From Octopus bimaculoides (lineage: Eukaryota), in assembly GCF_001194135.2 (NCBI RefSeq), contig NC_068994.1:23032422-23093102 (forward strand): a stretch of DNA of 60,681 nucleotides. Reading direction: 5' to 3'. The position numbers were made by a program, and so were the translations under genes. This document shows, one piece after another, positions 1 through 60,139 of this stretch. Each line of letters begins with the position of its first letter. Position 1 is the stretch's first letter. The notes under the pieces were generated by a model that did not search any database, had not been told where the DNA came from, and saw only the letters and a list, made by a program, of their open reading frames with translations.

Positions 1-1109
1 TCCTATTCGAGGGATTTTTAATTACGAATAGTGCGTCGTCCCTGTATAATCCACCTTCCAGGTCTGGGAATTCCTCCTGTATGTAGGAGAGCAGATAAAT
101 TCCCACTAAGTCACTTATCTGAGCTGAATCCGGGGCTCCCATGGTGATATCGAAGGAGTTTGGGGAGTCTTTACGGACCCAGAGCTTATTATCAAAACTT
201 ATAATAGATTTTCTAGCTTCAAGTATTACATTAATTTCTTTCCTAGTTAGCTGTGAGTTGTTTTTGGCAAATATTAGGGCACTATTTAATATCGTGGGGT
301 TAATTGAGGAGTAGTAGTCTACTATGTCTATCTGTATGAATTTGTAGTTACTAGTGTTCTGTATTTTGGAGAACCAGTTTAGGGCTTCGTATGTGTTAGA
401 CCATAATTCGAGGGAGAGTTTACTTTTTTAGCGTAGGGATGTACTTATCTAGTATTAGCTTACTTAATTTACATAGGTCTGATCTATTTGGGCATATTAA
501 TCTAACTTTAGTGTCTGTAAGGAAGTTGGGTTTATGGTCTTTTAAATTGATTCTAGGTCTAAGTGATATAAATGGTTCAGTTTTTTCGGCTAAGTTATAG
601 TCTAACATGATGTCCTTGGCTGCTAAGTTCATGGACCGTAAGGTGCTATCTGGTGTTACTTTATATTTTTTTGTAATTTCTTTGTGTAGGAGTTGGTGGT
701 ATAAGCTGATGTCCATAGTATAAGAATTTCTAGTTTTGTCCGAGTGGATAATAATTCCATTCTGGGATTTTAACTTGTGCAGTAGGTCCTTAAGGTATCT
801 TTGGTAATTATTCCTTAGTGGGTGTCGCTTGAATTTGATGTTTTTGATGGTGTTCCATATTTCGTTTTCAAATGCTTCTAAGTGGTTGTTTAGTGGAGGG
901 GTTTTCTTGGTCCTAAAGGTTCCTTTGGTGAGTTGGTTATTATCTCTGTGGTGGTGTGGCTCATTATGGGCATTTTTATCATGGAATAATGCCTTCCAAC
1001 GCAGTCGATGGGTGAAGTCAATTATTTTGCTGATAACTTCTTTAAGGTATACATTCCTGGGTGGTATTGGTATGTCCTTTAGAGATGCTTCTATTAGTAT
1101 CTGCTCCAT
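1..1109 (-). CDS. Penelope-like reverse transcriptase ORF with one +1 frameshift near 419-430
   Basis: SLKDIPIP, RLRWKA, SDKT and LKDHK motifs. After the frameshift the frame from 418 reads FIQIDIVDYYSSI, FDITMGAPDSAQISDLVG and LYRDDAL without stops to base 1. Confidence 0.9.
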
Positions 1110-40800: not shown

Positions 40801-43800
40801 TAAGGTGCCATCAACAAGGTATGGTATATCACTAAACGAATATTTTAAGCTGAGTGTACCAGTAGTATTATGATCAGAAACCATGATCCTAATGCTTTAA
40901 ATGCAAAAATATCCTTTTTTTGATTTGTAGTATTATAGATACTAGCGGGACCTGTGAATATTTCATAAAATTAATGGTAAACCTATCGGGTTATTTCTGA
41001 AAACTTTATCTAAAAAACCTGAAAGTGTGGCCTGTGTTGTTTCTGTATGGAAAGATAGTCGCTAATCTGCTACTCTTTGAAAAGTGAAAGAAATTGGAAT
41101 ATGATGATTACTTAATGCCCTTTATATACTTTATGCACAATTTTATAGACTTAATGCAGAACACTTATAAAATATTCACTCTTATTTTTCCATTTTCCCC
41201 ATAAAAAAATATCTTGTACATATAATACAACCTTTAGTTAAATTGCATATACCTGCCACGTAAATAAGCATGAATATTTCACGGAATCACAATGATGTGC
41301 ATGTTTTAAGTGATAGGTAATATAAAAGACTTAGTTCAATTAAAAAAAAAAGCACTTTTCACTATCCCATCATCACCCCTCCCCCCACACCACCTCCATC
41401 GCCACCACAACCACCATTATCATCTCTCTCTCCCTCTCCTCTCTTTTCCACCTCTCTCTTCTCTCTTTTCCTTCTCTGTGTGCCTTTCTTTAACCTCACC
41501 ATCAGAACATCACCTCCCTGCTAAAGTTATATTTTTAACTCTCCTCCTCTGCCTTCAACTAACTATTTTTAACCACATAATAAATATCACGTTTCCCCTA
41601 CCTCACATCATGGATGCTTCTCTGTCCCTCTTTTTTTTTCTCCCTCTTTCTATCTTACTCTTCGTCTTATCCTCCTTTTTCTTTCTGCTCTCTTTCTTTC
41701 AACTAATCACATGAAAGCATTACAATTACATTCCCTCTACCTCATGTCATGGACGTTTCCCTCTCTCTCATTTTTCTCTCCTTCTTTTCTTTCTCCTTCT
41801 TTTTCTCTAATCATGTGAAAGTGTTATTGAAGGGATAAGTAACACAATGACAAGCAGAATTATTATAAGATGTTTCTAAGAAATATCTGTATTTTGGAAC
41901 TCCTAATTGGGACCGATTCTTTCAGTCCTATTTGGAGAGATCCATTAACAAATGATGTGCAGGGCATGATTGTTTGCTTCTGAATGTGTGTAATTGAAAA
42001 TGAGATAGAAAAGAATATGATATGAAGAGGGAAGTGGGGTGAAACCTTGAAGTTGATGTATTCAGAGAGCTCACTTTGACACATTTTGAAAGGATGTGTT
42101 CAGTGGAGACAATATATTTGAAGGGGAATATGTCTGAAGATTTCTGATTGAATTACTTGGAGATAAAAGAAAGGAATAAACATGGATAAGTTGTTGTTAC
42201 CTTGCTTTACCAGGAGCAAAATGGTCAGTCAGCAAGTGATGTTTGAGTCCTTCTTTTGTCCATGCTGAACAATACATCTGAGAAAACAAAATGAATTTTT
42301 TTTTTATAATTCTTTTAATTGTTTCAGTCATTTGACTGCGGCCATGCTGGAGCATCGCCTTGATGTTGAAGTTTTTAAATGAAAAGTAATACTGATTCTG
42401 ATTAAAAGTTTTATTTTAATTTGAATAAAGTTCTTTGAAAGGTTTTAGTTTTCAAGAAATCCAATTATTTTATGATTTGATTATTCATTTTCTATGAATT
42501 GCAATAACGAAGTGTGATGTTTGGTCAACCCAAATTATTTTTTCTTTCACAAAGCAACATCTAAACCATCATTGAGGAAAGTTAATTACTATCAGGGAAT
42601 GAAATAAATTAATGAACCTTACTTGGGCAAAGCTGACATAAAATAACTGTGTTGGTGTCAAATCTAGTCCTGGAAGAGGTTTTTCAATTCCGTTTTCTTC
42701 TGTCCAGAGAAGGTAAGCCTGTCCAATAAAAAAGTTGAGAATGAGGAGTAAGAATTACTTCATTTATGTAGTGAAAATACATACAAGACTTGAATACATT
42801 TTGTGACCATTTGTATACTTTACATCATAATAACAAAGAGTCTTAAGACTTTTCTCATTTGGTTTTAATGAGCATTAGTGGTTTTCAGGAAGCGCATAAC
42901 TTGTAAACTATAGTATGACTAAAGAATCTTTACAGGGCTGTCTGACCTTCTAGAAACAGCAGCCAAATTTCTCTCATATCACACATTATAATCTTAGAAA
43001 AAAGGAAGGACAAAATAGATAATCTACTTCTAGATATCTAAAGAATGACAGGAGGGTCATGGTTGGAATGTTTTTGATCATAGATCTACTTGATCAGCAT
43101 TGAGTTGAAAACCAAACATCAGCCACAACAGCAGCAGCAACAACAATAATAACAACAGCAACCATAACTACTGTTATTGATTTTTCAGAGGCCTAATCTG
43201 ATACATAAGAACTTTTACTGTCTTCAGAATTAGCTGAAGACAATGCAAGACTGTTGCAGATTCATCGCAAAAAGTAAGTCATGTGAGCAATGATAGCAAA
43301 TGTACTTCTGCAGCTTCAAAATGAAGACCAGCATGACATTGATTGTAAGTATCAGTTGTTAAGCAATAAGTAAAAAATATAAAATATGAAGAAATACAAA
43401 TAATGTTGTTGCCCCAATATCAACAAGTCATAGAGATTGAAACTAGGTGCTAGATTGCCAACAAATTATTTTGTGCCATTAATTAGAATTTGTCCATATT
43501 TTACATTTAAAAAAAAATGTTTATATCAGACATTTGTTTTTTGTGTTGTTTATAGGTTTGTAATGTGCCAGTCACTAGTTCACTGTATTTTTGATGGTGA
43601 GAGTGACAAGGGAGTGTTTATGCAACTCAGGTAGAATTAATACCATAATGTATTTTTCTCTGAACAGACTGGCTTTCACTGATAAACAACAGCAAAAGAT
43701 ATAAATGCAAGCCATGCTAGCATATACGTATATGTGTATATATCATTATCATCATCATCATTCTCATTGCCATTCTTAACATCTGCTTTCCATTTTGGCA

Positions 43801-46119
43801 TGGATTGGCAGGCTTAACAGGAACTGACAAGTGAGGAGACTGCCAGGCTGCTTTGGCATGGTTTCTATAGCTGAACGCCCTCCTTCATGCCAACCACTTT
43901 ACAGAGTGTTGTGGAAGCTTTTTACATGGCACCAGCACCAACACCAGCAAGGTTACTAAGTAACTTGCAAGACAAGACTCCCTCAACTGAGTGGGGGAGT
44001 AGTACTGAGGAGGGTGGCTTTGTATCAGGTAATGAGAGGTTGGAGTATGACAAAAGAACTGAAACAGGTGTCTTGCAGTAGAGGAGATAGAAGGCGAGCC
44101 CAGTAGCCATTTATATATATATTTTATATCGCCTACCTAATGCCTCAAATCCTGATAGTAAATCTGAGGAAAGCCTTACAATGATAAAAGAAGTACTAAC
44201 AAAAGTAGATTAATGCATTAATATACTTCTGATTGGTGGCTTCAACTTCCCTAACACAAGATGGCTGGAAGGTGGCATACTCTCAGGAATGCCATGTGAA
44301 GAGCACAGTCAAGCAGAGTCTCTGCTTGATCTCATTTAAATGGTGTTCATGGAGCAAACCATACTCTTCCCAACCAGAAACAGTAACATATTAGACCTCT
44401 GCTTCACCAGCAATATGGAACATATCCACATGTGAACATATCACTGACAATCTTCTCAGATCACAACAATAAGAGAAAATTGCTTTCTAAAGACTATAAT
44501 AGCATTTACTGTTGGTAATATCTCTATTATCAAGTTAAATGAGCTGTTGAAGAGTTGTCAGACACTGAATAATTCTATATACTAGATGACAACAAATATT
44601 CAAGTTGATTAGAAAAGTTTTAGAGTAGAAATTAAAAAAAAAGTCTGAATTAGCTAACAAACCACTAGCTATTGTTTTATGAGATCTGAGATAAACTTAC
44701 AACATAGGCAGCACGTAAACCTCCATTGTCAGCTATATTTTCGTCAAGTGTCACCTCGCCATCAACCTAGGAGTAAACAGAAGAAAATATCAATACATCT
44801 TCTTGTATGAATACATTGATTAATTAAAGAGTACCAAAGTTAATTAGATTAATCAAAGTATAAAATGTAGAAAAACTTCAATACTTACATACAAATGTTC
44901 CACTTGATATGAACTGTAAGTTTTCCGAACACATTGTGTTGTGATGTTAAACTTTTTAGCCGTGTCTGGATTCCACCAGTTGCGTAACTGTCCATTTCCA
45001 TCATAATGCATTCCTTTATATATTGGTAAAGAACTACTTTTAGAATACATTCAGTTATTTACTATTCCTACATATAGTCATTCACATACATAGCGTAATA
45101 TATATAAATATTTGTATGAATATAATATATGTGTCTGTGTGTGTGTGTACACATATACATACATACATATGTACATATAAACAAACATATGTATGTGTGA
45201 GTGAGAGTAGCTACAGTAAAGTTAAATGATTAAGCTGTTCTCTTTGCACCCATGAGATATGGGTTTGCTCTCACTGCATCACACTTTGAAACTTAAAGTA
45301 CTAAACTGTTTTGATCCATACATGTAACTCCCAATGTGTATATAAGTCTGTGTGGAAAGAGGTTGTTCTTTCCAAGTATACACCAGTTTAGCAAATATAT
45401 TGATTATTCTGTGTATACATTTTCAATTTTCCTTGCATTGTTTTATATATATATATATATACTTTCTTAATCTATAAGTTTGCTCCTGTTAATATGTATA
45501 TGCATGTATGTTTTTGACTATATCATATATGTGTATTTATATTTATGTGTGTATGTGTGTGTGTATGTATATGCATTTATTTGTATATATTTGTATATGG
45601 TTGCTTATTTGTTTATATATTGTGAGTGGAAATGACTAGCAGGCAAGTGTCCAGTACTGAGGATGGGTAAGGCCCCAGAAACCAGTTCTAGTTTACTGGT
45701 CTTGCCATGCTGGAGGGAAGTGGTTTACTCCCTTACTCAGTATATCAGACACAGGTTGTCTGTCGTTAACCAGCTGGAAAAGATGTTTTCCTGGAGTTAA
45801 AAAGTAGTAACATAGTTCTGTATGGAACAGCCATGCTGAAGTGGCAACAAACATTACATTTTAGTATCATTAATACTTGTATCTCTTTTAGAGATTTTAG
45901 CACTTTGTAAATTAGGTCATCCATATTCTTTCATTCTTTTACTTGTTTCAGTCATTTGACTGTGGCCATGCTGGATTTATTCTTTGTAAGCCTAGTACTT
46001 ATTCTATCAGTCTCTTTTGTTGAACCACTAATTGACGGAGACGTAAACTCACCAACATCGGTTGTCAAGCGATGATGGAGAGGCAAACACAGGCACAAAC
46101 AACAAACACATACATACAC

Positions 46120-47791: not shown

Positions 47792-48683
47792 NNNNNNNNN
47801 NNNNNNNNNNNNNNNNNNNNNNNNNNNNNNNNNNNNNNNNNNNNNNNNNNNNNNNNNNNNNNNNNNNNNNNNNNNNNNNNNNNNNNNNNNNNNNNNNNNN
47901 NNNNNNNNNNNNNNNNNNNNNNNNNNNNNNNNNNNNNNNNNNNNNNNNNNNNNNNNNNNNNNNNNNNNNNNNNNNNNNNNNNNNNNNNNNNNNNNNNNNN
48001 NNNNNNNNNNNNNNNNNNNNNNNNNNNNNNNNNNNNNNNNNNNNNNNNNNNNNNNNNNNNNNNNNNNNNNNNNNNNNNNNNNNNNNNNNNNNNNNNNNNN
48101 NNNNNNNNNNNNNNNNNNNNNNNNNNNNNNNNNNNNNNNNNNNNNNNNNNNNNNNNNNNNNNNNNNNNNNNNNNNNNNNNNNNNNNNNNNNNNNNNNNNN
48201 NNNNNNNNNNNNNNNNNNNNNNNNNNNNNNNNNNNNNNNNNNNNNNNNNNNNNNNNNNNNNNNNNNNNNNNNNNNNNNNNNNNNNNNNNNNNNNNNNNNN
48301 NNNNNNNNNNNNNNNNNNNNNNNNNNNNNNNNNNNNNNNNNNNNNNNNNNNNNNNNNNNNNNNNNNNNNNNNNNNNNNNNNNNNNNNNNNNNNNNNNNNN
48401 NNNNNNNNNNNNNNNNNNNNNNNNNNNNNNNNNNNNNNNNNNNNNNNNNNNNNNNNNNNNNNNNNNNNNNNNNNNNNNNNNNNNNNNNNNNNNNNNNNNN
48501 NNNNNNNNNNNNNNNNNNNNNNNNNNNNNNNNNNNNNNNNNNNNNNNNNNNNNNNNNNNNNNNNNNNNNNNNNNNNNNNNNNNNNNNNNNNNNNNNNNNN
48601 NNNNNNNNNNNNNNNNNNNNNNNNNNNNNNNNNNNNNNNNNNNNNNNNNNNNNNNNNNNNNNNNNNNNNNNNNNNNNNNNNNN

Positions 48684-48724
<41 letters not shown>

Positions 48725-51116
48725 TACTGTGGCCCTTCTTCCGAGAAAAATGGTAGATGAAAAAGCGCCATAGGGAAGAAAAGCTCATTTCTAATTGGTG
48801 AATAGAAAGGGCTGACTGTGACTGGTGGAGATATCCATCTGAAGAGAAATCAATTAATTACAAAGATTGATATGTGTACAGTATTAGTAAATATATTTAA
48901 TCACCAAACGCACGCTGAAGCAACATATAAAATGTAGTCTTACTGAAATAAGGAAGTTTTTGTTAGCTAGAGTCTCATATTGATACATCAACTCATTAAT
49001 ATTGTATATCATATTTTGTAAACAATAGTGTTGTTGATTACAGTTTTCCACTGTGGCAATCATTGGTTCAGTTAATTTCTGATGGTGAAGGTGATGAGGG
49101 GGTGCCAATGATTTTCATATTCAGTGCATACAATGCCCCCCCCCCTACACACACACAATCACACTCTCATTGTGTGTGTATATATATATATATATATAAA
49201 CAAATAGCAACAGATAGATTGTGGTCCACTCACTACAGCTATTTCAGATGTATTTTTTATTGATGAATAGAATTATTGCATCATGTGAAAAAACTGTTTT
49301 CATCAGGTGAATATATGTCTGAATTAAACATTTCAAAACATCTTAAATTCCCAAGTGAGTGCCATTCAAGTCTCTCCAATGAAATTTGGTCAGAGGGTGA
49401 TTACACTCCTCTAGTTTGTTTGTACTCTATAAAGAGGAAGCCTTTAGGTGACTGGAATGAGGAGGGGAGTGAAAAGTAATTATAGTGGGAGGATGAATGT
49501 GGAATAGGAGATGAAAAGTGTATATTGCATTCTACCTCATGAAAAAAAATTATAAATTAGTTGTTATTTTATTTTATTTTAATCTATAAATAGCTAGACA
49601 ACAGAGTTCCTGTGGGGTGAGGGGGGGGGGGCGGCGGACGCAAAACTCATTAGAAGATAATATAAATCTAAGGCTGGGGACAGATCATTATGTACTTGCA
49701 TACATTCATTTGTGTACAAAGATAAAAGGAGATATAATAATATACCAGCCTATACATACAGTAATAAAGCATACATATACATAAAAATGTACTCTTACGC
49801 ACACACATACCTACACATACCTACACATACATACACACACACACATATATATACATATGTAAATATATATATATTCACATGTACAACCATATATATATAT
49901 ATATATATGCAATTAAATACACACATACACACACATATATATGCAATTAAATACACGCACATACACACACATATATATCTTAGGTTCTGGTAGGGTATAA
50001 AGGTAGGGTGTTTCCAGAGAAGCATTCAACTCAAATTCTGGGCTACCAACACTGTCAGGTTCCAGGTCAATGCCAAAATTCTTCAAGTGTAGAAAATCCT
50101 GGTTTCACAACAGTAACACTGCTGTGTGGGTTTGGCAAAGAGTAAATTATAATCCAAATAATAAGACAAGGGAACTCCTTAACACATCTTCCATGAATTG
50201 CCTCAACTGCCTCTGCACCAAATCAGCCTGCAATGCTAGTCAATGCAAAAATTCAAAGCAAAAATCCATGCAATGTTTGTGGTCTCAAACAATTGAGTAG
50301 TACCTCATCAAACCTGCATCAAAGGGTGCACTTTCACATTGTGCGCATTGTGAAAGTGCACTCCCAATGCAAGTCTGATGATAAGAATAAGAATAGAGAG
50401 AATCACATCTTTAATTGGTGATTATGAAGTACATTATCAATGATTGTTTCTTAATTCTTTATTGCCCACAAGGGGCTAAACATAGAGGGAACAAACAAGG
50501 ACAAACAAAGTGTGTAACTGGTATTTAATTTATCAATCCCGAAAGGATGAAAGGCAAAGTCAACCTCAGTGGAATGAACTCAGAACGTAACGGCAGACGA
50601 AATACAGTAAAGCATTTCGCCACCTTTTTAGATTGTTTCTATTTTGCCAGCATATTTAGATTCAGGAAAAGGTATAAAATACCAGTCGAATTAACATATT
50701 CAAAAATATATGCTAACACAACATTATCAAAACAATCCAAAATTGGTTAAATTCAAAGTGAACCAAGAAAATATCTCCAATACGTGAACAGATACAAAAA
50801 GAACATGAAGAAATATAATATTCATAGAAAAAACAGTTTCGTATCTAACTTTTGCTAATGTCAACGAAAGAATAAAAGATAAACAGAAATTTCTTAAAAT
50901 TCTTCTACACGATATTTGGATTTACTTGCCATACATGAAGAATTACCTTGGATGTTAATTATACTTGCATTTATTGGTATCTGATTGTTGGATATAATTA
51001 ACCAAAATCGTTTAACACTGAGTGCTTTATAGATATCTGCCTGGATTTATTAATCCCTTTTATTTCTTATATATATATATATATATATAATAATACGAAT
51101 AATATACATATATATA

Positions 51117-51158
<42 letters not shown>

Positions 51159-53753
51159 ATCATCATCATCATCATTGTTTAACGTCTGCTTTCCATGCTA
51201 GCATGGGTTGGACGATTTGACTGAGGACTGGCGAACTGGATGGCTGCACCAGGCTCCAATCTGATCTGGCAGAGTTTCTACAGCTGGATGCCCTTCCTAA
51301 CACCAACCACTCCGAGAGTGTAGTGGGTGCTTTTATGTTCCACCAGCATGAGGATCAGTCTGGTGGTACTGGCAACGACCAGGCTCAAATGGTGTTTTTT
51401 ACGTGCCACCTGGACAGGAGTCAGTCCAGCAGCACTGGCAATGATCTCACTCAAATGTTTTGTTCACATGCCACCAGCACAAGTGCCAGTAAGACGACAC
51501 TGGTAACGATCACGCTCAAATGGTGCGTTTTCCGTGCCACCGGCACAGAGGCTGCTCTGGCAGTGATCCCGCTCGGATGATGCTGTTAGTGCTCCACTGG
51601 CACGGGTGCCAGTCATCAAATTTGGTTCGATTTTGAATTCGATTGGGTGTGTGGAATAGAGTAGGTAATTATGTACTGCATATGTTTCTAAGAAAAGTTG
51701 ACTGAAGCTTATGTAACATTAGGTTATTACATATATGTTCAGCTCCCTTTTCTTTAGGTACATTTACCTTTTGTTTACAAAGTTCATTGTTGAAAAAAGT
51801 AGGTTTGATACATATATNNNNNNNNNNNNNNNNNNNNNNNNNNNNNNNNNNNNNNNNNNNNNNNNNNNNNNNNNNNNNNNNNNNNNNNNNNNNNNNNNNN
51901 NNNNNNNNNNNNNNNNNNNNNNNNNNNNNNNNNNNNNNNNNNNNNNNNNNNNNNNNNNNNNNNNNNNNNNNNNNNNNNNNNNNNNNNNNNNNNNNNNNNN
52001 NNNNNNNNNNNNNNNNNNNNNNNNNNNNNNNNNNNNNNNNNNNNNNNNNNNNNNNNNNNNNNNNNNNNNNNNNNNNNNNNNNNNNNNNNNNNNNNNNNNN
52101 NNNNNNNNNNNNNNNNNNNNNNNNNNNNNNNNNNNNNNNNNNNNNNNNNNNNNNNNNNNNNNNNNNNNNNNNNNNNNNNNNNNNNNNNNNNNNNNNNNNN
52201 NNNNNNNNNNNNNNNNNNNNNNNNNNNNNNNNNNNNNNNNNNNNNNNNNNNNNNNNNNNNNNNNNNNNNNNNNNNNNNNNNNNNNNNNNNNNNNNNNNNN
52301 NNNNNNNNNNNNNNNNNNNNNNNNNNNNNNNNNNNNNNNNNNNNNNNNNNNNNNNNNNNNNNNNNNNNNNNNNNNNNNNNNNNNNNNNNNNNNNNNNNNN
52401 NNNNNNNNNNNNNNNNNNNNNNNNNNNNNNNNNNNNNNNNNNNNNNNNNNNNNNNNNNNNNNNNNNNNNNNNNNNNNNNNNNNNNNNNNNNNNNNNNNNN
52501 NNNNNNNNNNNNNNNNNNNNNNNNNNNNNNNNNNTATATATATATATGATATTATTTGTATTATTTTTTAATTGAATGCCACGCATCCATTTCGAAGTAA
52601 GTTTATGTATATACACACACACAATATTTTGTGTCTATTACCAATGTATACAAGTGAGGCTGTATATTTGGTTCTATTTTGCTCCTTTTCCAAAAGTGCT
52701 GTCATGCTTGTATCTATTCTATCACCATGCCTAGCTGGTGTCATTTTGTGGGTGTTGTACATCATACACTGTCAAGGTTTGGACCTAAAACAAGCAGCAT
52801 ATATCTTAACAAATGTAGAACATTTAAGAAGTATGTTATGCTTGTTTCCTGAATTTTGATAATATTTAGTTCCAGGTTAGCCCTCATTGAGCATGTTTGA
52901 AATGAGAAGCATTTCAAACATGACCATCTGTCATTTCTTTTTATTTGTTATAGATGTAGTATATCAAAGAATACATTATCCAATGTGTCCTCTGTTCATT
53001 ATCCTCCTCCTCCTCCCCTGCTACCCATCATCATCGTTGTTATCATTATCATTGTTGTTGCTTTAACATCTATTTTTCCATGCTTGCATGGTTTAGATGA
53101 AAATAAGTTGGGGCAGAGCTTTCTATAGCTGGATGCTGTTCCTGATACCATCACTTGCCAGTTTCCCGGTTCAGGTTATAAACTCCCTGTTTATTGAACA
53201 ACAAACAACCCAGACATGTTTACATGGAGAATTGGAAACAAACAACACTGGTTGAATGTACTTTTTTTGTTTACAAATGTCACACATGACATCTGGGCAT
53301 CTTTTTTGCAGTGAGACTGCAAGCATACAACATCTTTTGCTTGTGTATCCATTGTTTACAATCAATGAACACAAATGAAGATGAGAAATATGACCTCACT
53401 CATGTGTGCACGTGTGCGTTTGCACACACACACACACACATGTATTTATGTACGATGAGCCTGCCAATTCTACTCACAAGGCTTTGGTTGGTCTGGGATT
53501 GTAGTAGAAGACACTCAAGATGCAATCCAATGGGACTGAACTCAAAACCACATGGTTGGGAAACAAACTTCTGAACAACACAGCCATATTTGCACTTATA
53601 TTTATGTACACTAATGACCTCTCATTCCACACCATGCTACACCATTAATATTGATTGACTTATTGCCACTTCTTGTATCAAATTAATGAGAATGATTCAG
53701 ACAAATGGCTTCTGATGCTGGATTAATGATATTAACTCATTGCTTAGTCTGTA

Positions 53754-53800
<47 letters not shown>

Positions 53801-56800
53801 CACGCACACATATGCACGCACACACATGCACGCACACACATGTGCACACACAAACATAAAACTAAAGAGAAGAAAAGGAAGACACCGATAGAATTCGAGT
53901 GAAACCAAACATAATATAAAATGAGTCATTAGACAGCTGATATATGAAAAGAAATTGACAGATGAAAATTTTTGAGGAAAATTGTGATATATATATATAT
54001 TTGGAAAAAAAGACAAAAAAAAAAAAAAGAGAATCAGTTGATTTTGAGTGGATTATAGGTAAATCTTGGTATATACATATGTATTCTAAAGTGAGGAAGG
54101 ATACCAGCTGTTGTAGTTCTACTGTTCTTAATAAATGGGATGTAGATTAATGGAATGCTTCAGCAGGATCCTAATTCAAATATTGCAATGGAACAAACTG
54201 GTTGTCATTAGATTACCAGATCTGTGCTGATATTCATTAGCAATGGAATTTGTTTTATTAACAGAAGTACTTTTGAAGTGGTACATTTGTTAGGTCAATC
54301 AGTTCTATCTTTTGTAACCCATTTCTGACATGTCATAACAGTTTCAAATTTGGGTACAAGGCTAGTAATTTTGGGGGAGTGGGTAAGTCAATTACATCAA
54401 TCCTAGTGATCAATTGGTACTTATTTTATTGATCCTGAGAGGATGAAAGGCAAAGTTGGCTTTGGCAGAATTTGAACTCAGAACATGAAGATGGATGAAA
54501 TGCCTCTAAGGATTTTTCCCAGCATGCTAACAATTCTGCTAGCTAACTGCTCTATTTCTGACATATAATATCAATGACCCAAACTCTTATGATTTATAAA
54601 GTTCAAGTGTAATGTTTTATTGCTTTCTCACTGTCATAGATTTTAAATTCAAAAGCATAATTACATGTAAATTTTCTTTTAATAAAAGTAAGATAAAAAC
54701 ATTAAAAGTATACTACTCTTCATATAGACAAATTGCACTTACCTCCGTCTGTCAGGTTTTTCTATTAATTGTGCTATCATCTTTTCTAAATCAAATTTTT
54801 TCCAGTTTATTAAATTAGTAAACCAACTTGACTCCAAAACATCAAACTAACAAAGATAAAAGAGACATCGTTTCATAAAATCAAAAAAAACAGGTTTAAT
54901 ACAAAGTCTATATATCTTGTACATCATTATATGTGTAAATAATTTTGATTAAGTGTATAGTATCACTTCTAGAACCATTATATGGGCAGGTCACTTGAGT
55001 TTGCCACTGGCAACATGTAATCTAGTACAACATATTTCATGGTTGATTTGTCAGTAATCCTACCAAGTTTGCTTGATGAGGAGGGTGATTTTTGACACCC
55101 TGCAAGATGAAAAACCAGGCCCTGCCTAAAAGCAGATAAACCCAGGGAAGTTGATGGCCATCCAATAATATGCACAGAAGTATCGTCAGATGATGGCTTA
55201 GCTGGCTGAAACTTCAAAGCCACTCTCAACAACATTCTTGTTTAAGAGTAATAAATTTGTACTCTGCTAAACCATAGAGTAACCCATCAGATTATTGTAA
55301 AATTGTTTTCATTATAACTGAACACAAAAACAAACACAAAAAAACAAACACAAAAAAACAAACAAACACACACACACACACACACACGTTTTGCTTATTG
55401 GAAGTGGATTTGTGTTTAACATTGTTATCTAATAAAATGCTAATCATATACTCAATATATCTGTTATTACTGTAGTGAAGGCCTAGTTGAAGTGGGTCAT
55501 TGAAAGAATTTCTTTAGAAATGTATCCCAGTTTTACACAGTAAATAAAAACTTGTGAAAGTTACTTACCTGTTTATAATAGTTATTAAGAAATGTAGTAT
55601 TGAGCATGAATGAAGGGTAACTGACTTTCTCTATCATAGAATCCAGCTAAAAAAAAATGAACAGAATTAGTAGTATTTAACACACACAGATACACAAGCA
55701 ACAAAAGAAAGAAAAACTGAAATGGAAAATAGAAGTTATCTGGAGTCTTTTCAGAGACTCTTTTGCTGACATAACTATAGACTAGTGCCCATATTACTGA
55801 TTACTAATATCCAGTAATATAGGTTGGATAATATAGTATACAGCAGTTGCTGTATCAGTATACAGCAAACAGATGCAAATAAAGAACAACTGGATGCATT
55901 CATAATAAATCACTTGAAACTGATTACTTGGAAAGAGAGGGTCAGCAATACCATAATCCTAGAGAAAGCCAAGCTTCTTAGCAAAGAAAAAATATTGGTT
56001 CAATGAATTCTCCACTATCTTGGGTTTGTTGTAAGAATGGAGGAAACACAGTTATCAAAGCAAATATTAAACTTGCAACTATCTAATGGTAGAAGAAATT
56101 GAAGAAGATCCTGACTGAAATATGAGAATGTGAACAATTCAAGCCATCATAATGGATGGTTAATTTTGACTATCAACAGAGTACCCATAATGGTTATGAT
56201 TATCTGCATCATTGTTCTTCCAAAATAAGATCTTTCATATAAGCCATGATGATCATAAAGCTAGAAGTTTGTGTATTGGATATTACTAAGTGATATCTTG
56301 GTTGTAAGTGAGAATGTAATGACATATCACTTAAAAGTAAGAATAACTTCAATGGCGGAGCATCCAAGGAAAGCTGAAATCATGTGCTCTGGTGGTCTTC
56401 ACACTAGAGATAATGGGGATTTATCTCCCTGCTAGTGATATAAATAACATATATAACATTATTTGTTGGAGAATATGAGGCTATGATAGAAAAATACCAA
56501 ATATAAAGAAAAATTACAATCATTTCAATCATAGCCAGAGTATGGTTATTTTCACTGTATGTGCATTAATGAGTTTTATTTTACAATACAAATACCTAAT
56601 CATTTAAAAGTTAAATTGTTCATTCTTTATACAGTTTTATTTTTTCTTTGTAATAATTATAGAGTGGAAGAACTATTTTGTCTGAAGTCATATGAAAGCT
56701 GTTACATTCATTTTCCATTTTGTGAAATGTCAAAATTTTCAAAACAATTGCAAGACAAGCATCAAGTGGATGTGGAACAAAGAAGATGCCAGAGTCCAAC

Positions 56801-57405: not shown

Positions 57406-60139
57406 TATACATATATATACATATATATATACATATATATACATATACTGAGAGAGAGAGAGAGAGAGAGTGAGAGAGAGAGAGAGAGAGGGAGAGAGAG
57501 AGAGAGAGAAAGAGAAAGAAAGAGAGCTAAGGAAGTAGATTGTTAATAAAGTAGAATTAATGGTAAATAGTTACTTTTGCAGCCGCCGCAGCTTTTGTAT
57601 ACTTGTCCATCCAGAACTTTCTCAGGATGTAGGCTTTAAATGCCTCCTTGATATATTTAATTAAGTTTTCAATCTAAATTAGAAATAAATAAAAAATATA
57701 TAAACAATACAACATATTTTTGATTGTAATAAATTTTGGGTAGTATGTATCATAGTTATCTTTGTGTCTGTGTAAAGTTTTAGTTTACTTGAGTGTTGCT
57801 GTGTATTGTGTATGTGTGAGTATTTGCATGTATGCATGTGTGTAGGCTGTGTGTGTGTAATTTGAATATTTGATGTCCATGCAGTACATCTATTTATAAA
57901 TATCACATACATACATACACATAAAAACATATAGTCTATGATCTCCTCATAACAGAAGTTAGCTAGTTAACAATGTATTGGAGTAAGGCAATATTGGGCT
58001 GAATTCTAGTTGATTAGAATTAGATTATTAATTACTCAACCTAAGTTAAGTTATCCTTGTGAAAGTGGATTGTAATGATTATTTTTATTTATTCAAGGCA
58101 AAAAATGTTTAAAAAATTGGAGACAATTGTAAAGAGTTACCTCTATTCCTACATTGTATCTCTTTCTCTACTCATTGGTAAGTAAAATGGAGCTTTGCTT
58201 ATATACAGCATGTGACAGTAGTCTCTTATCTTTGAGAGCTTCAGCAAAAGCAATCATTCCTTCTGGGACAAGATACACTTAGTAAAGATACCTGTCTATG
58301 CACTCCACCTATCTTTCATCTCAAGGATTAGTTGTTTCTTGTCTCAAAAACTGGCTCTTAGTCCCTACATCTTAAAGATTGGCCATTAGGGCTTGGAAGT
58401 TCTTCAGCTCCTAATATATGTTAATGGATCTTTCTCCAGCCCACATTAGGTTAACCTTTTAGCATTCAGTTTATTCTGTCAAATGTAATGTTTATTTATT
58501 CAATGTTTTGAATTAATCATGCATTGTCTTGTAACTTTGAGATTTCAATGATGTGATTGTTTACTTTTAGAATGGCATTATAAAGTAGGTGTGAGAAGCT
58601 GAATCTGATTTAATCATAAAACAAATTGAATATTTTGGCTGGATATGGTTGGTTTAAATGCTAAAGGGTTAAGTGTTCCTCTTGTTTTGGTTATGTCTCT
58701 GAGACTCTTCTCTCTCTCCACATAAATAAAATGCCAACTGTCATTTGTTAGGTGATACTACATTTTTCTTCTTGATATAAACATTTTCCACTTGTAACCT
58801 AAACACAGACTTTTATGAATGGTGAACTCGAAAAGATCCTGCAATGAGGATATCATAAATAAGTTTTATTCAACACCACTATGACATAGTCATTAGATAT
58901 ACCATGAAAATGTAAAAGTGTACACGTTTCTTACTCATCACTTAACTTTTGTATATTTTATAAATGCCAAGTTTCACAATTTTTGATCATCTTTTGTAGC
59001 AACCACACATTACACAATTAGATCTACACCTCAAAAGCTAATTTAGGAATTGATCAGTTGCTGACTCACCATCTCTAAGTAAGTCCTACTCACTGTCATG
59101 CTACAACCACAAGCTTTCAGACCAGACCATTAAAACACTTTTTGCTTTGTCTAAAGACACTGATCTAAAGATGTTTAAGCTGGATATTAACTACACCAGT
59201 TTGGTTGTGGTGGGAATCTAATGAAGCAGTAAGGTTTTCTGATTATAAGGAATTCAATTTATATTCACATCTCCCTGTTGCTTTGTATCAGATGAGCCCT
59301 AACTGAAAAGAGCTATGATCAAATGCATTCTGTCTATAACCATTGTTTTCTCTGTTATAATGCATTTGGGACTATATAATCCAGTGTGGCCTTATTTTAA
59401 AATGATAGGACATAGTTACAGAGGGATTTACCTGTTATATAATTGGTACTGTTTATATAAAAGATCAGTTATAATAAATTACCAAAACCTATGACACAAA
59501 TGACACAACTATAAAAGAATAAAAATAGGAGTGATTTAAGCATGATTACACTAGGAAAATATATGGAGTGATTAGTATCTTTACAGTTGGACTAAGTGAT
59601 AAAAATCACTCAACTCATCTTCGTCTGGAATTATACATAATTCAGAAACATGTCCATAGTTGTCACAATACTGTCAAAATCAGACAGACTTCCCATTGCA
59701 TTGCCTACATTATATTTTTAATTAATTTTAATTAATTAAAACAATGGGTTTGACTTTTCTGCTTCTTGATTAGTATTGATCATTAAGTTGATAATTCTTT
59801 TTCCCCACAACAGATATAAGCATAGGAGCTTAGATTTTACTTGAAATATGTTAGCACAGATCTTACTAAATAATAAGGATTAAAAAGAATTTGATGAATT
59901 GATGATTTAATTACTGGAGTTTTAATCAATCAAAAGAATGACAACTGACTGTCTGCAACTACAATTTTAACAGAAATTAATATTGGAAGAAAAAAAAGGG
60001 AAAGAAAGATTGGTTACTTTGTCATGGATTTCTCTCCCCTTTGTTGCTGCCTTTACGTAGATGGCACCAGTGGCAAAACCCAATGCTTTGTTTGTATAGA
60101 AAATGCATCGTTTCCAGTTGTCCAATGGTTTACGAGAAT
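37727..60139 (-). CDS. M13-family (neprilysin/endothelin-converting enzyme-like) zinc metallopeptidase, 3' part: 11 coding exons, 5' end outside window
   Basis: Join of 60139-60018, 57673-57575, 55646-55569, 54846-54743, 48838-48728, 47537-47470, 45013-44889, 44766-44701, 42718-42623, 42277-42201 and 37826-37727 gives 1046 nt in one open frame, with AG/GT at every junction and matching phases. Motifs: [24 protein letters not shown]-terminal KCEVW*. The orthologue cannot be assigned by eye. Confidence 0.95.
37871..38130. mobile_element. hAT-type MITE in the last intron
   Basis: TIRs cagtgattctcaac / gttgagaaccactg; 8-bp TSD accgaaat / acctaaat (7 of 8 identical). Confidence 0.85.
39270..40170 (+). 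mobile_element. Degraded RTE-type LINE reverse transcriptase core (intronic)
   Basis: [41 protein letters not shown]. Confidence 0.85.
42201..42277 (-). CDS. M13 peptidase exon: [25 protein letters not shown](R)
   Basis: ctcAG acceptor, GTAACA donor, 77 nt, phase 0 to 2; aligns with xWC...TDxHSP...R. Confidence 0.9.
42623..42718 (-). CDS. M13 peptidase exon: [32 protein letters not shown]
   Basis: acAG acceptor, GTAAGG donor, 96 nt; LPGL..T..QLF...FAQ motif. Confidence 0.95.
43770..44100 (-). mobile_element. SINE family B copy (intronic)
   Basis: (CAT)n end and ggtttctatagctgaacgccctccttcatgccaacc motif. Confidence 0.6.
44110..44480 (+). mobile_element. CR1/L2-type APE endonuclease fragment (intronic)
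   Basis: [34 protein letters not shown]. Confidence 0.7.
44701..44766 (-). CDS. M13 peptidase exon with third zinc ligand: [22 protein letters not shown]
   Basis: cctAG acceptor, GTAAGT donor, 66 nt; ENIADNGG. Confidence 0.96.
44889..45013 (-). CDS. M13 peptidase exon: (G)[41 protein letters not shown]
   Basis: aaAG acceptor, GTAAGT donor, 125 nt; YD..G.L..WW...T...F...QC motif; also visible in the ORF track. Confidence 0.95.
45636..45713 (+). ncRNA. Type I hammerhead ribozyme motif, solitary, antisense within an M13 intron
   Basis: CCAGTA CTGAGGA TGGG-TAAGGC-CCCA GAAA C CAGTTCTA G TT TACTGG; stem I extends through GGCAAG/CTTGCC and CTAGCA/TGCTGG. Confidence 0.75.
45937..46326 (-). mobile_element. 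SINE family A, best-preserved copy (tRNA-like head, (TG)n middle, body); other pieces near 3540-3700, 5760-5910, 19140-19320, 25560-25730, 42303-42365, 53400-53590
   Basis: Minus strand begins gtggttgtgtggtaagaag...gggttcagtcccactgcgtagcaccttgagcaagtgtcttctac (A-box- and B-box-like); recurs through the window. Confidence 0.75.
47470..47537 (-). CDS. M13 peptidase exon with zinc motif: [22 protein letters not shown](G)
   Basis: tttcAG acceptor, GTAAGT donor, 68 nt; HExxH present. Confidence 0.95.
47792..48683. other. Assembly gap. Other gaps: 2361-2962, 13466-13930, 16713-16726, 25790-25817, 35851-36047, 51818-52534
   Basis: N runs, mostly bordered by microsatellites; the M13 frame joins across the gaps without needing hidden exons. 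Confidence 0.98.
48728..48838 (-). CDS. M13 peptidase exon: (R)[36 protein letters not shown](Q)
   Basis: cttcAG acceptor, GTAAGT donor, 111 nt, phase 2 to 2; aligns with W...P..VNAFY...N.I.FPAGILQPPFF. Confidence 0.9.
51158..51640 (-). mobile_element. SINE family B, best-preserved copy (RTE-like 3' tail); others near 25250-25480, 34600-34830, 53050-53360
   Basis: catcatcattgtttaacgtctgctttccatgctagcatgggttggacg... recurs several times; the tail resembles the 3' end of the RTE LINE near 15740-15790. Confidence 0.75.
54743..54846 (-). CDS. M13 peptidase exon: [34 protein letters not shown]
   Basis: ttAG acceptor, GTAAGT donor, 104 nt, phase 0 to 2; fits both neighbours. Confidence 0.88.
55569..55646 (-). 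CDS. M13 peptidase exon: [26 protein letters not shown]
   Basis: (T)nAG acceptor, GTAAGT donor, 78 nt; corresponds to the KIGYP..I.N...L..YY segment. Confidence 0.9.
55800..56250 (+). mobile_element. Degraded RTE-type LINE C-terminal fragment (intronic)
   Basis: LDAF....[19 protein letters not shown]...GFVVRM...LSKQIL...NGRR. Confidence 0.6.
56896..56964. repeat. 20-bp minisatellite, about 3.3 copies
   Basis: tgaa recurs at 56901, 56921, 56941 and 56961. Confidence 0.75.
57575..57673 (-). CDS. M13 peptidase exon: [33 protein letters not shown]
   Basis: tttAG acceptor, GTAACT donor, 99 nt; I..AF...WMD..TK..A..K motif. Confidence 0.92.
58455..58668. mobile_element. piggyBac-type MITE (intronic); partial second copy at about 46375-46500
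   Basis: TTAA on both sides (58451-54, 58669-72); TIRs ccttttagcatt / aatgctaaaggg. Confidence 0.7.
60018..60139 (-). CDS. M13 peptidase exon (first in window): [41 protein letters not shown]
   Basis: ttcAG acceptor, GTAACC donor, 122 nt; matches the M13 RW..C...G.A.G..YV segment. Confidence 0.88.

What the first reader, a model, noticed from the sequence alone, without database searches (positions are those of the whole stretch)
42201..42232. Catalytic His711 position is Phe, with a His one residue upstream
The exon reads [10 protein letters not shown] against neprilysin T-D-V-H-S-P-G-N-F-R. Spacing to Pro, Gly and Arg is identical, so Phe (TTT, 42220-42218) occupies the His711 column. The neighbouring His might compensate or might point away from the zinc. 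A-to-I editing cannot turn TTT into a His codon.
Basis: partly seen in the sequence, partly recalled or inferred. Interest (0 to 1): 0.7.

Follow-up and report, generated by a model that had tools for sequence, protein, structure and literature searches.

The report
Octopus ECE-like peptidase lacking catalytic His
An octopus gene for a neprilysin/endothelin-converting-enzyme-type zinc peptidase carries Phe where the family's transition-state histidine sits; the change is real, shared by octopuses, an argonaut and a cuttlefish, and comes with two other active-site losses, so the protein is probably a weakened or non-canonical enzyme of an already known sort.

Summary
On the minus strand, exon 42277-42201 encodes [26 protein letters not shown]. 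Ungapped HMMER and MAFFT alignments put Phe (TTT, 42220-42218) in the neprilysin His711 / ECE-1 His732 column, with His (CAT, 42223-42221) one residue upstream.

It is not an assembly error or a pseudogene. The 347 residues encoded in the window match Octopus bimaculoides 'ECE-1-like' exactly. The same TDHFAPG occurs in O. vulgaris, O. sinensis, Argonauta hians and Sepia pharaonis, and in spliced transcript contigs from four sequencing runs. All 11 exons have clean splice sites. Octopus versus cuttlefish gives pN 0.064 against saturated pS.

The change is not isolated. Coleoids also have NAFY→SPFY (Asn542, Ala543) and Asp590→Gly. HEITH, ENIAD, Asp709, Arg717 and CxxW are kept. All 67 other M13 proteins aligned, including 16 gastropod and bivalve orthologues, keep His711 and Asp590.

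The most likely reading is a conserved, membrane-anchored M13 protein with impaired or re-wired catalysis, comparable to the 'neprilysin-like' proteins of insects. Whether the shifted His compensates could not be tested, because no model coordinates were available. It is a new member of a known kind, of moderate to low interest.

The parts
42201..42277 (-). Exon E10 (penultimate coding exon), [25 protein letters not shown](R). This is the exon in the finding.
   Evidence: AG/GT splice sites and reading frame. Ungapped alignment to NEP and ECE-1.
42218..42220 (-). TTT = Phe in the neprilysin His711 / ECE-1 His732 column (the transition-state histidine).
   Evidence: His in 67/67 non-coleoid sequences of A1.
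42221..42223 (-). CAT = His in the 710 column, which is variable in the family (Pro, Val, Ser and others).
   Evidence: Conserved in all five coleoid species.
42224..42226 (-). GAC = Asp709 equivalent, retained. In NEP this Asp partners His711.
   Evidence: Role taken from PMC7822871.
47470..47537 (-). Exon E6, [23 protein letters not shown]. The HExxH zinc motif is intact (His 47500-47498, Glu 47497-47495, His 47488-47486). The Asp590 column is Gly (GGC, 47479-47477).
   Evidence: Asp in 67/67 other sequences.
48728..48838 (-). Exon E5, [37 protein letters not shown]. The NAFY substrate-binding motif reads SPFY (Ser AGC 48813-48811 for Asn542, Pro CCT 48810-48808 for Ala543).
   Evidence: Consensus Asn 57/67 and Ala 59/67.
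44701..44766 (-). Exon E8, [22 protein letters not shown]. The ENIAD motif is intact (Glu646 GAA 44742-44740, Asp650 GAC 44730-44728).
44889..45013 (-). Exon E7, MHYDGNG...[15 protein letters not shown]. Thr (ACT 44921-44919) replaces the conserved Gln624-column residue.
42623..42718 (-). Exon E9, [32 protein letters not shown].
37727..37826 (-). Last coding exon E11, (R)[32 protein letters not shown] plus the TGA stop. It completes the Arg717 codon and carries the C-terminal CxxW motif.
54743..54846 (-). Exon E4, [34 protein letters not shown](R).
55569..55646 (-). Exon E3, [26 protein letters not shown].
57575..57673 (-). Exon E2, [33 protein letters not shown].
60018..60139 (-). Exon E1, the first exon of this gene inside the window: (D)[40 protein letters not shown]. 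The N-terminal ~450 residues lie beyond the window end.
   Evidence: Full-length orthologue P0377 is 796 aa.

Best explanation
The window holds the 3' half (11 exons, minus strand) of the Octopus bimaculoides orthologue of the molluscan 'endothelin-converting enzyme homolog'. This is a type II membrane protein of peptidase family M13. Before octopuses and cuttlefish split, its active site was remodelled at three places: the transition-state His711 became Phe (with His now at 710), Asp590 of the Asp-His587-Zn triad became Gly, and Asn542-Ala543 of the NAFY substrate-binding motif became Ser-Pro. The zinc ligands, the general-base Glu, Asp650, Asp709, Arg717 and the whole fold were kept under strong purifying selection. 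Shown here: the substitutions are real, transcribed, conserved across coleoids and concentrated in the active site. Inferred: canonical neprilysin-type catalysis is strongly impaired, so the protein works as a slow or altered-specificity zinc peptidase or as a zinc- and peptide-binding pseudo-peptidase, like the insect 'neprilysin-like' proteins.
For: Register.

Real and conserved: the window protein is 347/347 identical to O. bimaculoides XP_014790689.1. TDHFAPG, SPFY and [11 protein letters not shown] are also present in O. vulgaris, O. sinensis, Argonauta hians and the Sepia pharaonis cluster.

Transcribed: four intronless contigs from four SRA runs carry an identical CDS with GAC CAT TTT.

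Intact gene: 11 exons, all introns AG...GT, in phase, no stops.

Selection: pN 0.064 against pS 0.78 (saturated) over 347 codons, octopus versus cuttlefish.

Derived state: all 16 gastropod and bivalve orthologues and 51 other M13 proteins have His711 and Asp590.

Concentration in the active site: across the ~800-residue alignment only 6 columns have both coleoids departing from a >=85% consensus (N542S, A543P, D590G, Q624T, H711F, S712A). That is 4 of 10 conserved catalytic columns against 2 of 82 other conserved columns, Fisher p = 0.001.

Functional expectation: in the bacterial M13 enzyme PepS, D538N (= Asp590) abolished activity and H654A (= His711) left little (PMC4701951). Asp709-His711 and Asn542 roles are from PMC7822871.

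Fold: AF2 model with pLDDT 84.9 and pTM 0.84, TM 0.87-0.91 to NEP and ECE-1.
Against: No activity, zinc-content or structural measurement exists for this protein. HEITH, ENIAD, Asp709 and Arg717 are retained in all five coleoid species. That is what one would expect if metal-dependent chemistry is still selected, so activity may be kept through the neighbouring His710 or another route. The mutational data come from other M13 enzymes and single substitutions, not this background. Whether coleoids also carry a canonical co-orthologue could not be checked exhaustively, and the state in Nautilus is unknown.
Confidence: 0.6

Rival explanations
1. Compensated active enzyme. The His at position 710 (or another group) takes over transition-state stabilisation in a slightly re-packed loop, and the protein is a fully competent zinc endopeptidase with changed subsite specificity (SPFY instead of NAFY).
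For: All first-shell catalytic residues are retained in all five coleoid species examined, octopods and a cuttlefish alike. His710 is conserved in all five coleoids. DHFAP lies in a loop between two helices in the model, so a register shift is sterically conceivable. His at 710 coexists with His711 in other lineages, for example Dreissena DHHSPG, which gives a plausible stepwise route. Purifying selection is strong.
Against: Asp590 is also lost, and the equivalent mutation killed PepS. Asn542 is lost too. No other M13 with demonstrated activity is known to me to use a 710 His. No coordinates were available, so the His-to-zinc distance could not be measured.
Confidence: 0.27
2. Assembly or sequencing error at the codon: the true genome has CAT or CAC.
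For: The window is a draft assembly with seven N gaps.
Against: The same TDHFAPG is found in independent assemblies and annotations of five species and in transcript contigs from four runs. CAT to TTT needs two base changes.
Confidence: 0.01
3. Decaying pseudogene or relaxed paralogue whose active site is drifting.
For: Three catalytic-site residues have been lost.
Against: All splice sites and the frame are intact. pN 0.064 against saturated pS. Identity between octopus and cuttlefish is 89% over this half, and 82% (octopus P0377) over the full-length cuttlefish query. Spliced full-length transcripts exist. Only 6 of 92 conserved columns have changed.
Confidence: 0.02
4. Alternative exon. A second, canonical copy of this exon (with DxHSPG) is spliced in instead, so the Phe form is a minor isoform.
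For: The cuttlefish gene does show alternative splicing elsewhere, a 30-nt microexon.
Against: A permissive tblastn (E <= 10, word size 2) with gastropod orthologues found a single match for this exon in the window. All annotated octopus, argonaut and cuttlefish isoforms carry DHF.
Confidence: 0.02

Closest known systems
Human endothelin-converting enzyme 1 (PDB 3dwb) and neprilysin (PDB 1dmt), peptidase family M13
   Same: Same two Pfam domains and the same fold (TM 0.87-0.91). Same type II membrane topology. HExxH, ENIAD, Asp709, Arg717 and C-terminal CxxW are all present. The last 175 residues align to ECE-1 without any gap.
   Different: His711/His732 is Phe, Asp590/Asp614 is Gly, and Asn542-Ala543 is Ser-Pro.
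Gastropod and bivalve 'endothelin-converting enzyme homolog' (e.g. Aplysia XP_035829094.1, Biomphalaria, Patella, Ostrea XP_048744475.2)
   Same: These are the orthologous clade, 52-58% identical over the C-terminal half. They share clade-specific features such as FPxAxFHLPFY and AQMYCS.
   Different: All keep DxHSPG and HEITHAFD. Gastropods keep NAFY. Bivalves have ESDY in place of NAFY, and Pinctada has HEITQ.
Drosophila neprilysin-like (Nepl) proteins, e.g. Nepl15 (PMC7822871, PMC8223033, PMC2259306)
   Same: M13 homologues that lack key catalytic residues (no His711 counterpart, no Asn542, Ala543 replaced by Pro in Nepl15), yet are conserved, expressed and biologically active. They are proposed to bind or sequester peptides.
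   Different: Nepl15 has also lost zinc ligands and the general-base Glu, and is secreted. The coleoid protein keeps the complete zinc site and its membrane anchor, and appears to be the only orthologue found rather than one copy of a lineage-specific expansion.
Engineered M13 mutants: PepS H654A and D538N (PMC4701951); NEP His711 mutants (Dion et al. 1993, cited there, not read here)
   Same: The same two positions are altered. From memory, a Phe substitution at His711 was among those made in NEP; I could not check this.
   Different: Those are single laboratory substitutions in otherwise canonical enzymes. Here the changes are natural, combined and long conserved.

Membership tests
Peptidase family M13 (neprilysin/ECE), as a protein family | Peptidase_M13_N (PF05649) plus Peptidase_M13 (PF01431) domains | tested here: met
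   O. vulgaris orthologue P0377, 99.4% identical to the window protein: PF05649 E = 7.8e-67, PF01431 E = 7.5e-56, both far above the curated cut-offs.
Peptidase family M13 (neprilysin/ECE), as a protein family | Two-domain neprilysin fold | tested here: met
   AF2 model pTM 0.84. Foldseek TM (target-normalised) 0.91 to 3dwb and 0.89 to 1dmt.
Catalytically competent neprilysin ('Nep' class, four-motif rule of PMC8223033) | HExxH zinc-binding motif | tested here: met
   HEITH at 47500-47486.
Catalytically competent neprilysin ('Nep' class, four-motif rule of PMC8223033) | ENIAD(xGG) motif (third zinc ligand Glu646, Asp650) | tested here: met
   DENIADNGG in exon E8.
Catalytically competent neprilysin ('Nep' class, four-motif rule of PMC8223033) | C-terminal CxxW motif | tested here: met
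   KCEVW followed by the stop at 37727.
Catalytically competent neprilysin ('Nep' class, four-motif rule of PMC8223033) | NAY/FY substrate-binding motif (Asn542) | tested here: not met
   VTVSPFYSP: Ser-Pro in place of Asn-Ala, in all coleoids.
Catalytically competent neprilysin (mechanistic residues beyond the four motifs) | Transition-state His711 with its partner Asp709 | tested here: not met
   Asp is present, but the His column holds Phe and His is shifted to 710.
Catalytically competent neprilysin (mechanistic residues beyond the four motifs) | Asp590-His587-Zn triad | tested here: not met
   HEITHAFG: Gly in a column that is Asp in 67/67 other sequences.
Catalytically competent neprilysin (mechanistic residues beyond the four motifs) | Arg717 / Asp650 salt bridge residues | tested here: met
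   GKAR and ENIAD are retained.
Catalytically competent neprilysin | Measured zinc-dependent, phosphoramidon-sensitive peptide hydrolysis | not testable with these tools
   Needs recombinant protein.
M13 non-peptidase homologue / 'neprilysin-like' pseudo-peptidase | M13 fold with one or more key catalytic or substrate-binding residues missing, yet conserved and expressed | tested here: met
   Three sites are lost. pN 0.064 against saturated pS. Spliced transcripts exist.
M13 non-peptidase homologue / 'neprilysin-like' pseudo-peptidase | Demonstrated absence of peptidase activity | not testable with these tools
   There is no assay. The zinc ligands and general base are all intact, so inactivity is an inference.

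The most novel reading that the evidence does not exclude
In the coleoid lineage, the only orthologue found of the molluscan ECE homologue did not simply lose function. It evolved a re-wired M13 active site: the transition-state His moved one residue (His710), the Asp590-His-Zn triad was dropped and the S2' Asn-Ala was replaced. The result would be a still-catalytic zinc peptidase with a new mechanism or specificity, conserved since before the octopus-cuttlefish split and possibly tied to cephalopod-specific neuropeptide processing.
Probability: 0.2. Interest if true: 0.55.

Novelty: new member of a known kind. Interest (0 to 1): 0.35.

Why it matters
M13 ectopeptidases switch peptide signals on and off, and cephalopods have unusually elaborate neuropeptide systems. 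A conserved coleoid ECE homologue keeps its zinc site but lacks the transition-state His, the Asp590 triad residue and the Asn542 substrate clamp. It is a clean natural test of how far the neprilysin mechanism tolerates second-shell loss. It is also another example, outside insects and nematodes, of an M13 protein kept by selection for a non-canonical role. For annotation, genes currently named 'endothelin-converting enzyme 1-like' in Octopus, Argonauta and Sepia should not be assumed to have ECE-type activity. The finding does not reveal a new kind of system.

Tried and rejected
1. Assembly error: rejected by five-species conservation and transcript contigs.

2. Pseudogene: rejected by intact splice sites and frame, and by pN much lower than pS.

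3. Mis-registered alignment: phmmer to PDB sequences and MAFFT on 69 sequences both give an ungapped register. An indel pair by descent (loss of residue 710, insertion after His) cannot be told apart from substitutions without intermediate taxa. It would not change the structural register either.

4. Alternative canonical exon in the window: none found with a permissive tblastn.

5. Measuring the His-to-zinc distance: structure prediction returns confidence values and secondary structure but no coordinates, and no model file appeared in /data. It showed only that DHFAP (756-760) is a loop between helices 746-755 and 761-770.

6. The first two word-index protein searches, with 176- and 347-aa queries, returned no hit longer than 308 and 608 residues respectively, and no cephalopod hit. 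The exhaustive representative search and a full-length query were needed to find them.

7. Reading Dion et al. 1993 for the kinetic effect of NEP His711 mutants: the paper is not held.

8. Looking up the O. vulgaris genomic locus through P0378: not on record.

9. Rfam scan of the window: no hits.

10. Search for an octopus counterpart of the cuttlefish 30-nt microexon: none found.

Full report
**1. What is at the coordinates**

Read on the minus strand, 42277-42201 is an exon flanked by an AG acceptor and a GT donor. It encodes [25 protein letters not shown] plus two bases of an Arg codon, which is completed by the first base of the last exon.

- Asp GAC 42226-42224
- His CAT 42223-42221
- Phe TTT 42220-42218
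- Ala GCT 42217-42215
- Pro CCT 42214-42212

**2. Register**

A phmmer search of the C-terminal 176 residues against all PDB sequences gives human ECE-1 (3dwb, E = 2e-54) and neprilysin (1dmt, E = 3e-44). The ECE-1 alignment has no gap at all; the neprilysin one has a single 3-residue gap about 80 residues upstream and none near the site. '[15 protein letters not shown]' pairs with 'LITDPHSPSRFRVIG' and 'IKTDVHSPGNFRIIG'.

A 69-sequence MAFFT alignment gives the same ungapped register. So Phe sits in the His711 (ECE-1 His732) column and His in the 710 column. Asp709, Pro713, Gly714 and Arg717 stay in place.

**3. The gene**

Eleven exons of one M13 gene lie on the minus strand between 60139 and 37727. 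All introns are GT...AG, all junctions are in phase, there are no internal stops, and the gene ends in the family's CxxW motif and a TGA stop.

They encode 347 residues, the C-terminal part of a protein of about 790 residues. The N-terminal part lies beyond the window end. No second M13 copy and no alternative version of the exon is present in the window.

**4. Whose gene it is**

The word-index protein search returned no hit longer than about 1.75 times the query (308 and 608 residues) and at first showed only a Pomacea fragment at 57-59% identity. The exhaustive representative search found P0220, 89% identical. Its 90% cluster contains 'ECE [Acanthosepion/Sepia pharaonis]'.

A full-length query then recovered Octopus vulgaris 'endothelin-converting enzyme 1-like / homolog'. 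Its cluster holds proteins from O. sinensis, Argonauta hians and O. bimaculoides. The window protein is 347/347 identical to O. bimaculoides XP_014790689.1. It is 345/347 identical to O. vulgaris and O. sinensis, and 333/347 to Argonauta. The window is therefore O. bimaculoides, from a draft assembly with seven N gaps.

**5. Real, expressed and under selection**

- Every one of these coleoid proteins contains TDHFAPG.
- Four contigs of 3.4-3.7 kb from four different sequencing runs carry the uninterrupted 2385-nt cuttlefish CDS. The octopus gene needs more than 22 kb and ten introns for its last 347 codons alone, so these contigs are spliced transcripts. All read ACG GAC CAT TTT GCT CCT GGA.
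- Nei-Gojobori counts for octopus against cuttlefish over 347 codons give pN = 0.064 and pS = 0.78, which is saturated. That indicates strong purifying selection.

Assembly error and pseudogene are both excluded.

**6. The change is not alone**

The coleoid proteins also read VTVSPFYSP where the family has V-N-A-F/Y-Y (Asn542 and Ala543 of neprilysin). They read [11 protein letters not shown] where the family has HExxHxFD (Asp590).

They keep:
- both zinc histidines and the general-base Glu (HEITH)
- the third ligand Glu646 and Asp650 (ENIAD)
- Asp709 and Arg717
- the C-terminal CxxW

All 16 gastropod and bivalve orthologues and 51 further M13 proteins in alignment A1 have His711 and Asp590, that is 67/67 each.

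Across the whole ~800-residue alignment there are 92 columns with a >=85% consensus among the non-coleoids. Both coleoids depart from that consensus in only six: N542S, A543P, D590G, Q624T, H711F and S712A. Four of the ten conserved catalytic-site columns are hit, against two of 82 others (Fisher one-sided p = 0.001). One of those two others is the residue next to His711. This is a focused remodelling of the active site in an otherwise tightly conserved protein, not general decay.

**7. Family and fold**

Pfam finds both M13 domains far above threshold in the O. vulgaris orthologue. An AlphaFold2 model of it, built on the 69-sequence alignment, has mean pLDDT 84.9 and pTM 0.84. It matches ECE-1 and neprilysin structures with target-normalised TM 0.87-0.91.

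In the model D756-H757-F758-A759-P760 is a loop between helices 746-755 and 761-770, with a block pLDDT of 88.

**8. What the residues do in known enzymes**

- His711 is thought to stabilise the transition state, and Asp709 orients it.
- Asp590 and Asp650 form Asp-His-Zn triads.
- Asn542 of the NAFY motif hydrogen-bonds the substrate or inhibitor backbone.
- Arg717 bridges to Asp650.

These roles are from PMC7822871.

In the bacterial M13 peptidase PepS, D538N (= Asp590) abolished activity. H654A (= His711) left little activity, with an unchanged CD spectrum (PMC4701951). The Drosophila classification calls an M13 protein a likely active 'Nep' only if HExxH, ENIAD, CxxW and NAY/FY are all present (PMC8223033). 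By that rule the coleoid protein would be 'neprilysin-like'.

**9. Most likely mechanism**

Shown: a conserved, transcribed, membrane-anchored M13 protein with a complete zinc site. It lacks the canonical transition-state His, one triad Asp and the Asn-Ala substrate clamp.

Inferred: neprilysin-type catalysis is strongly impaired. The protein would act as a slow or specificity-shifted peptidase, or as a zinc- and peptide-binding pseudo-peptidase, as proposed for Drosophila Nepl15. I put about 0.6 on impaired or non-canonical function.

The main rival, at about 0.27, is compensation by His710. Points in its favour:
- the whole first shell is retained in all five coleoid species examined
- His710 is conserved in all five coleoids
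- the site is a loop
- His710 coexists with His711 in other lineages, such as Dreissena DHHSPG, which gives a stepwise route

**10. Comparison with what is known, and novelty**

M13 homologues lacking catalytic residues are well documented in insects and nematodes (PMC2259306, PMC8223033, PMC7822871). In my sample of 469 domains, non-His residues at this column recur, mostly together with other losses.

What is particular here:
- the zinc site is fully kept
- the protein is the only coleoid orthologue found of a canonical molluscan ECE homologue, not a member of a gene expansion
- the state is shared by octopods and a cuttlefish, so it predates the octopus-cuttlefish split

I found no paper on it: a search for 'endothelin-converting enzyme' with 'octopus' or 'cephalopod' listed none about this protein. 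I classify it as a new member of a known kind, with interest about 0.35.

**11. Verdict**

The added value from this stage is threefold. The substitution is coleoid-wide. It is one of three coordinated active-site changes. The gene is under strong constraint.

Noticed in passing
window 12723-13058 (+): ORF fragment of a mariner-type transposase (Pfam Transposase_1 PF01359, E = 2.7e-20). It lies downstream of the M13 gene, not within it, and is probably a decayed transposon copy.
   Followed up: partly
window 420-1109 (-): 229-aa ATG-initiated ORF with no Pfam match. It may be derived from a repeat or retroelement; origin unknown.
   Followed up: partly
window 47792-48683 and 51818-52534 (five further N runs elsewhere): Assembly gaps inside introns of the M13 gene. 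The first gap starts 44 nt after the donor of exon E5 and is preceded by a long poly-T run. No coding exon appears to be lost, since the spliced product matches the annotated O. bimaculoides protein 347/347.
   Followed up: yes
L001 (cuttlefish transcript), between the equivalents of window exons E1 and E2; window intron 60017-57674: Cuttlefish isoforms P0220 and P0368 carry ten extra residues (EKYVRAIYAK) that P0370 and P0371 lack, which points to an alternatively spliced 30-nt microexon. No counterpart was found in the octopus intron at up to 3 mismatches.
   Followed up: partly
P0398 (O. sinensis XP_029645271.2): A 1921-aa 'uncharacterized protein' whose C-terminus is this M13 protein (TDHFAPG at residue 1880). 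It looks like a fused gene model in the O. sinensis annotation.
   Followed up: no
Orthologues P0387-P0390, P0224, P0227, P0237: Bivalve orthologues of the same clade have ESDY or EADY in place of NAFY while keeping His711 and Asp590. Pinctada P0237 has HEITQ (second zinc His lost), DDHGVEP, and an N-terminal EGF-like region. Active-site erosion therefore recurs in this molluscan clade.
   Followed up: partly
window 44919-44921 (-): Thr replaces a Gln (neprilysin Gln624 column, 'DQY' motif) that is conserved in 60 of 67 other M13 proteins and in all 16 mollusc orthologues. This is the only coleoid-specific change at a conserved column with no role known to me.
   Followed up: no
window 51368-51548: A 65-bp tandem repeat of 2.8 copies at 70% match, inside an intron. 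There are also many (TA)n, (TG)n and (TC)n simple repeats throughout the window.
   Followed up: no
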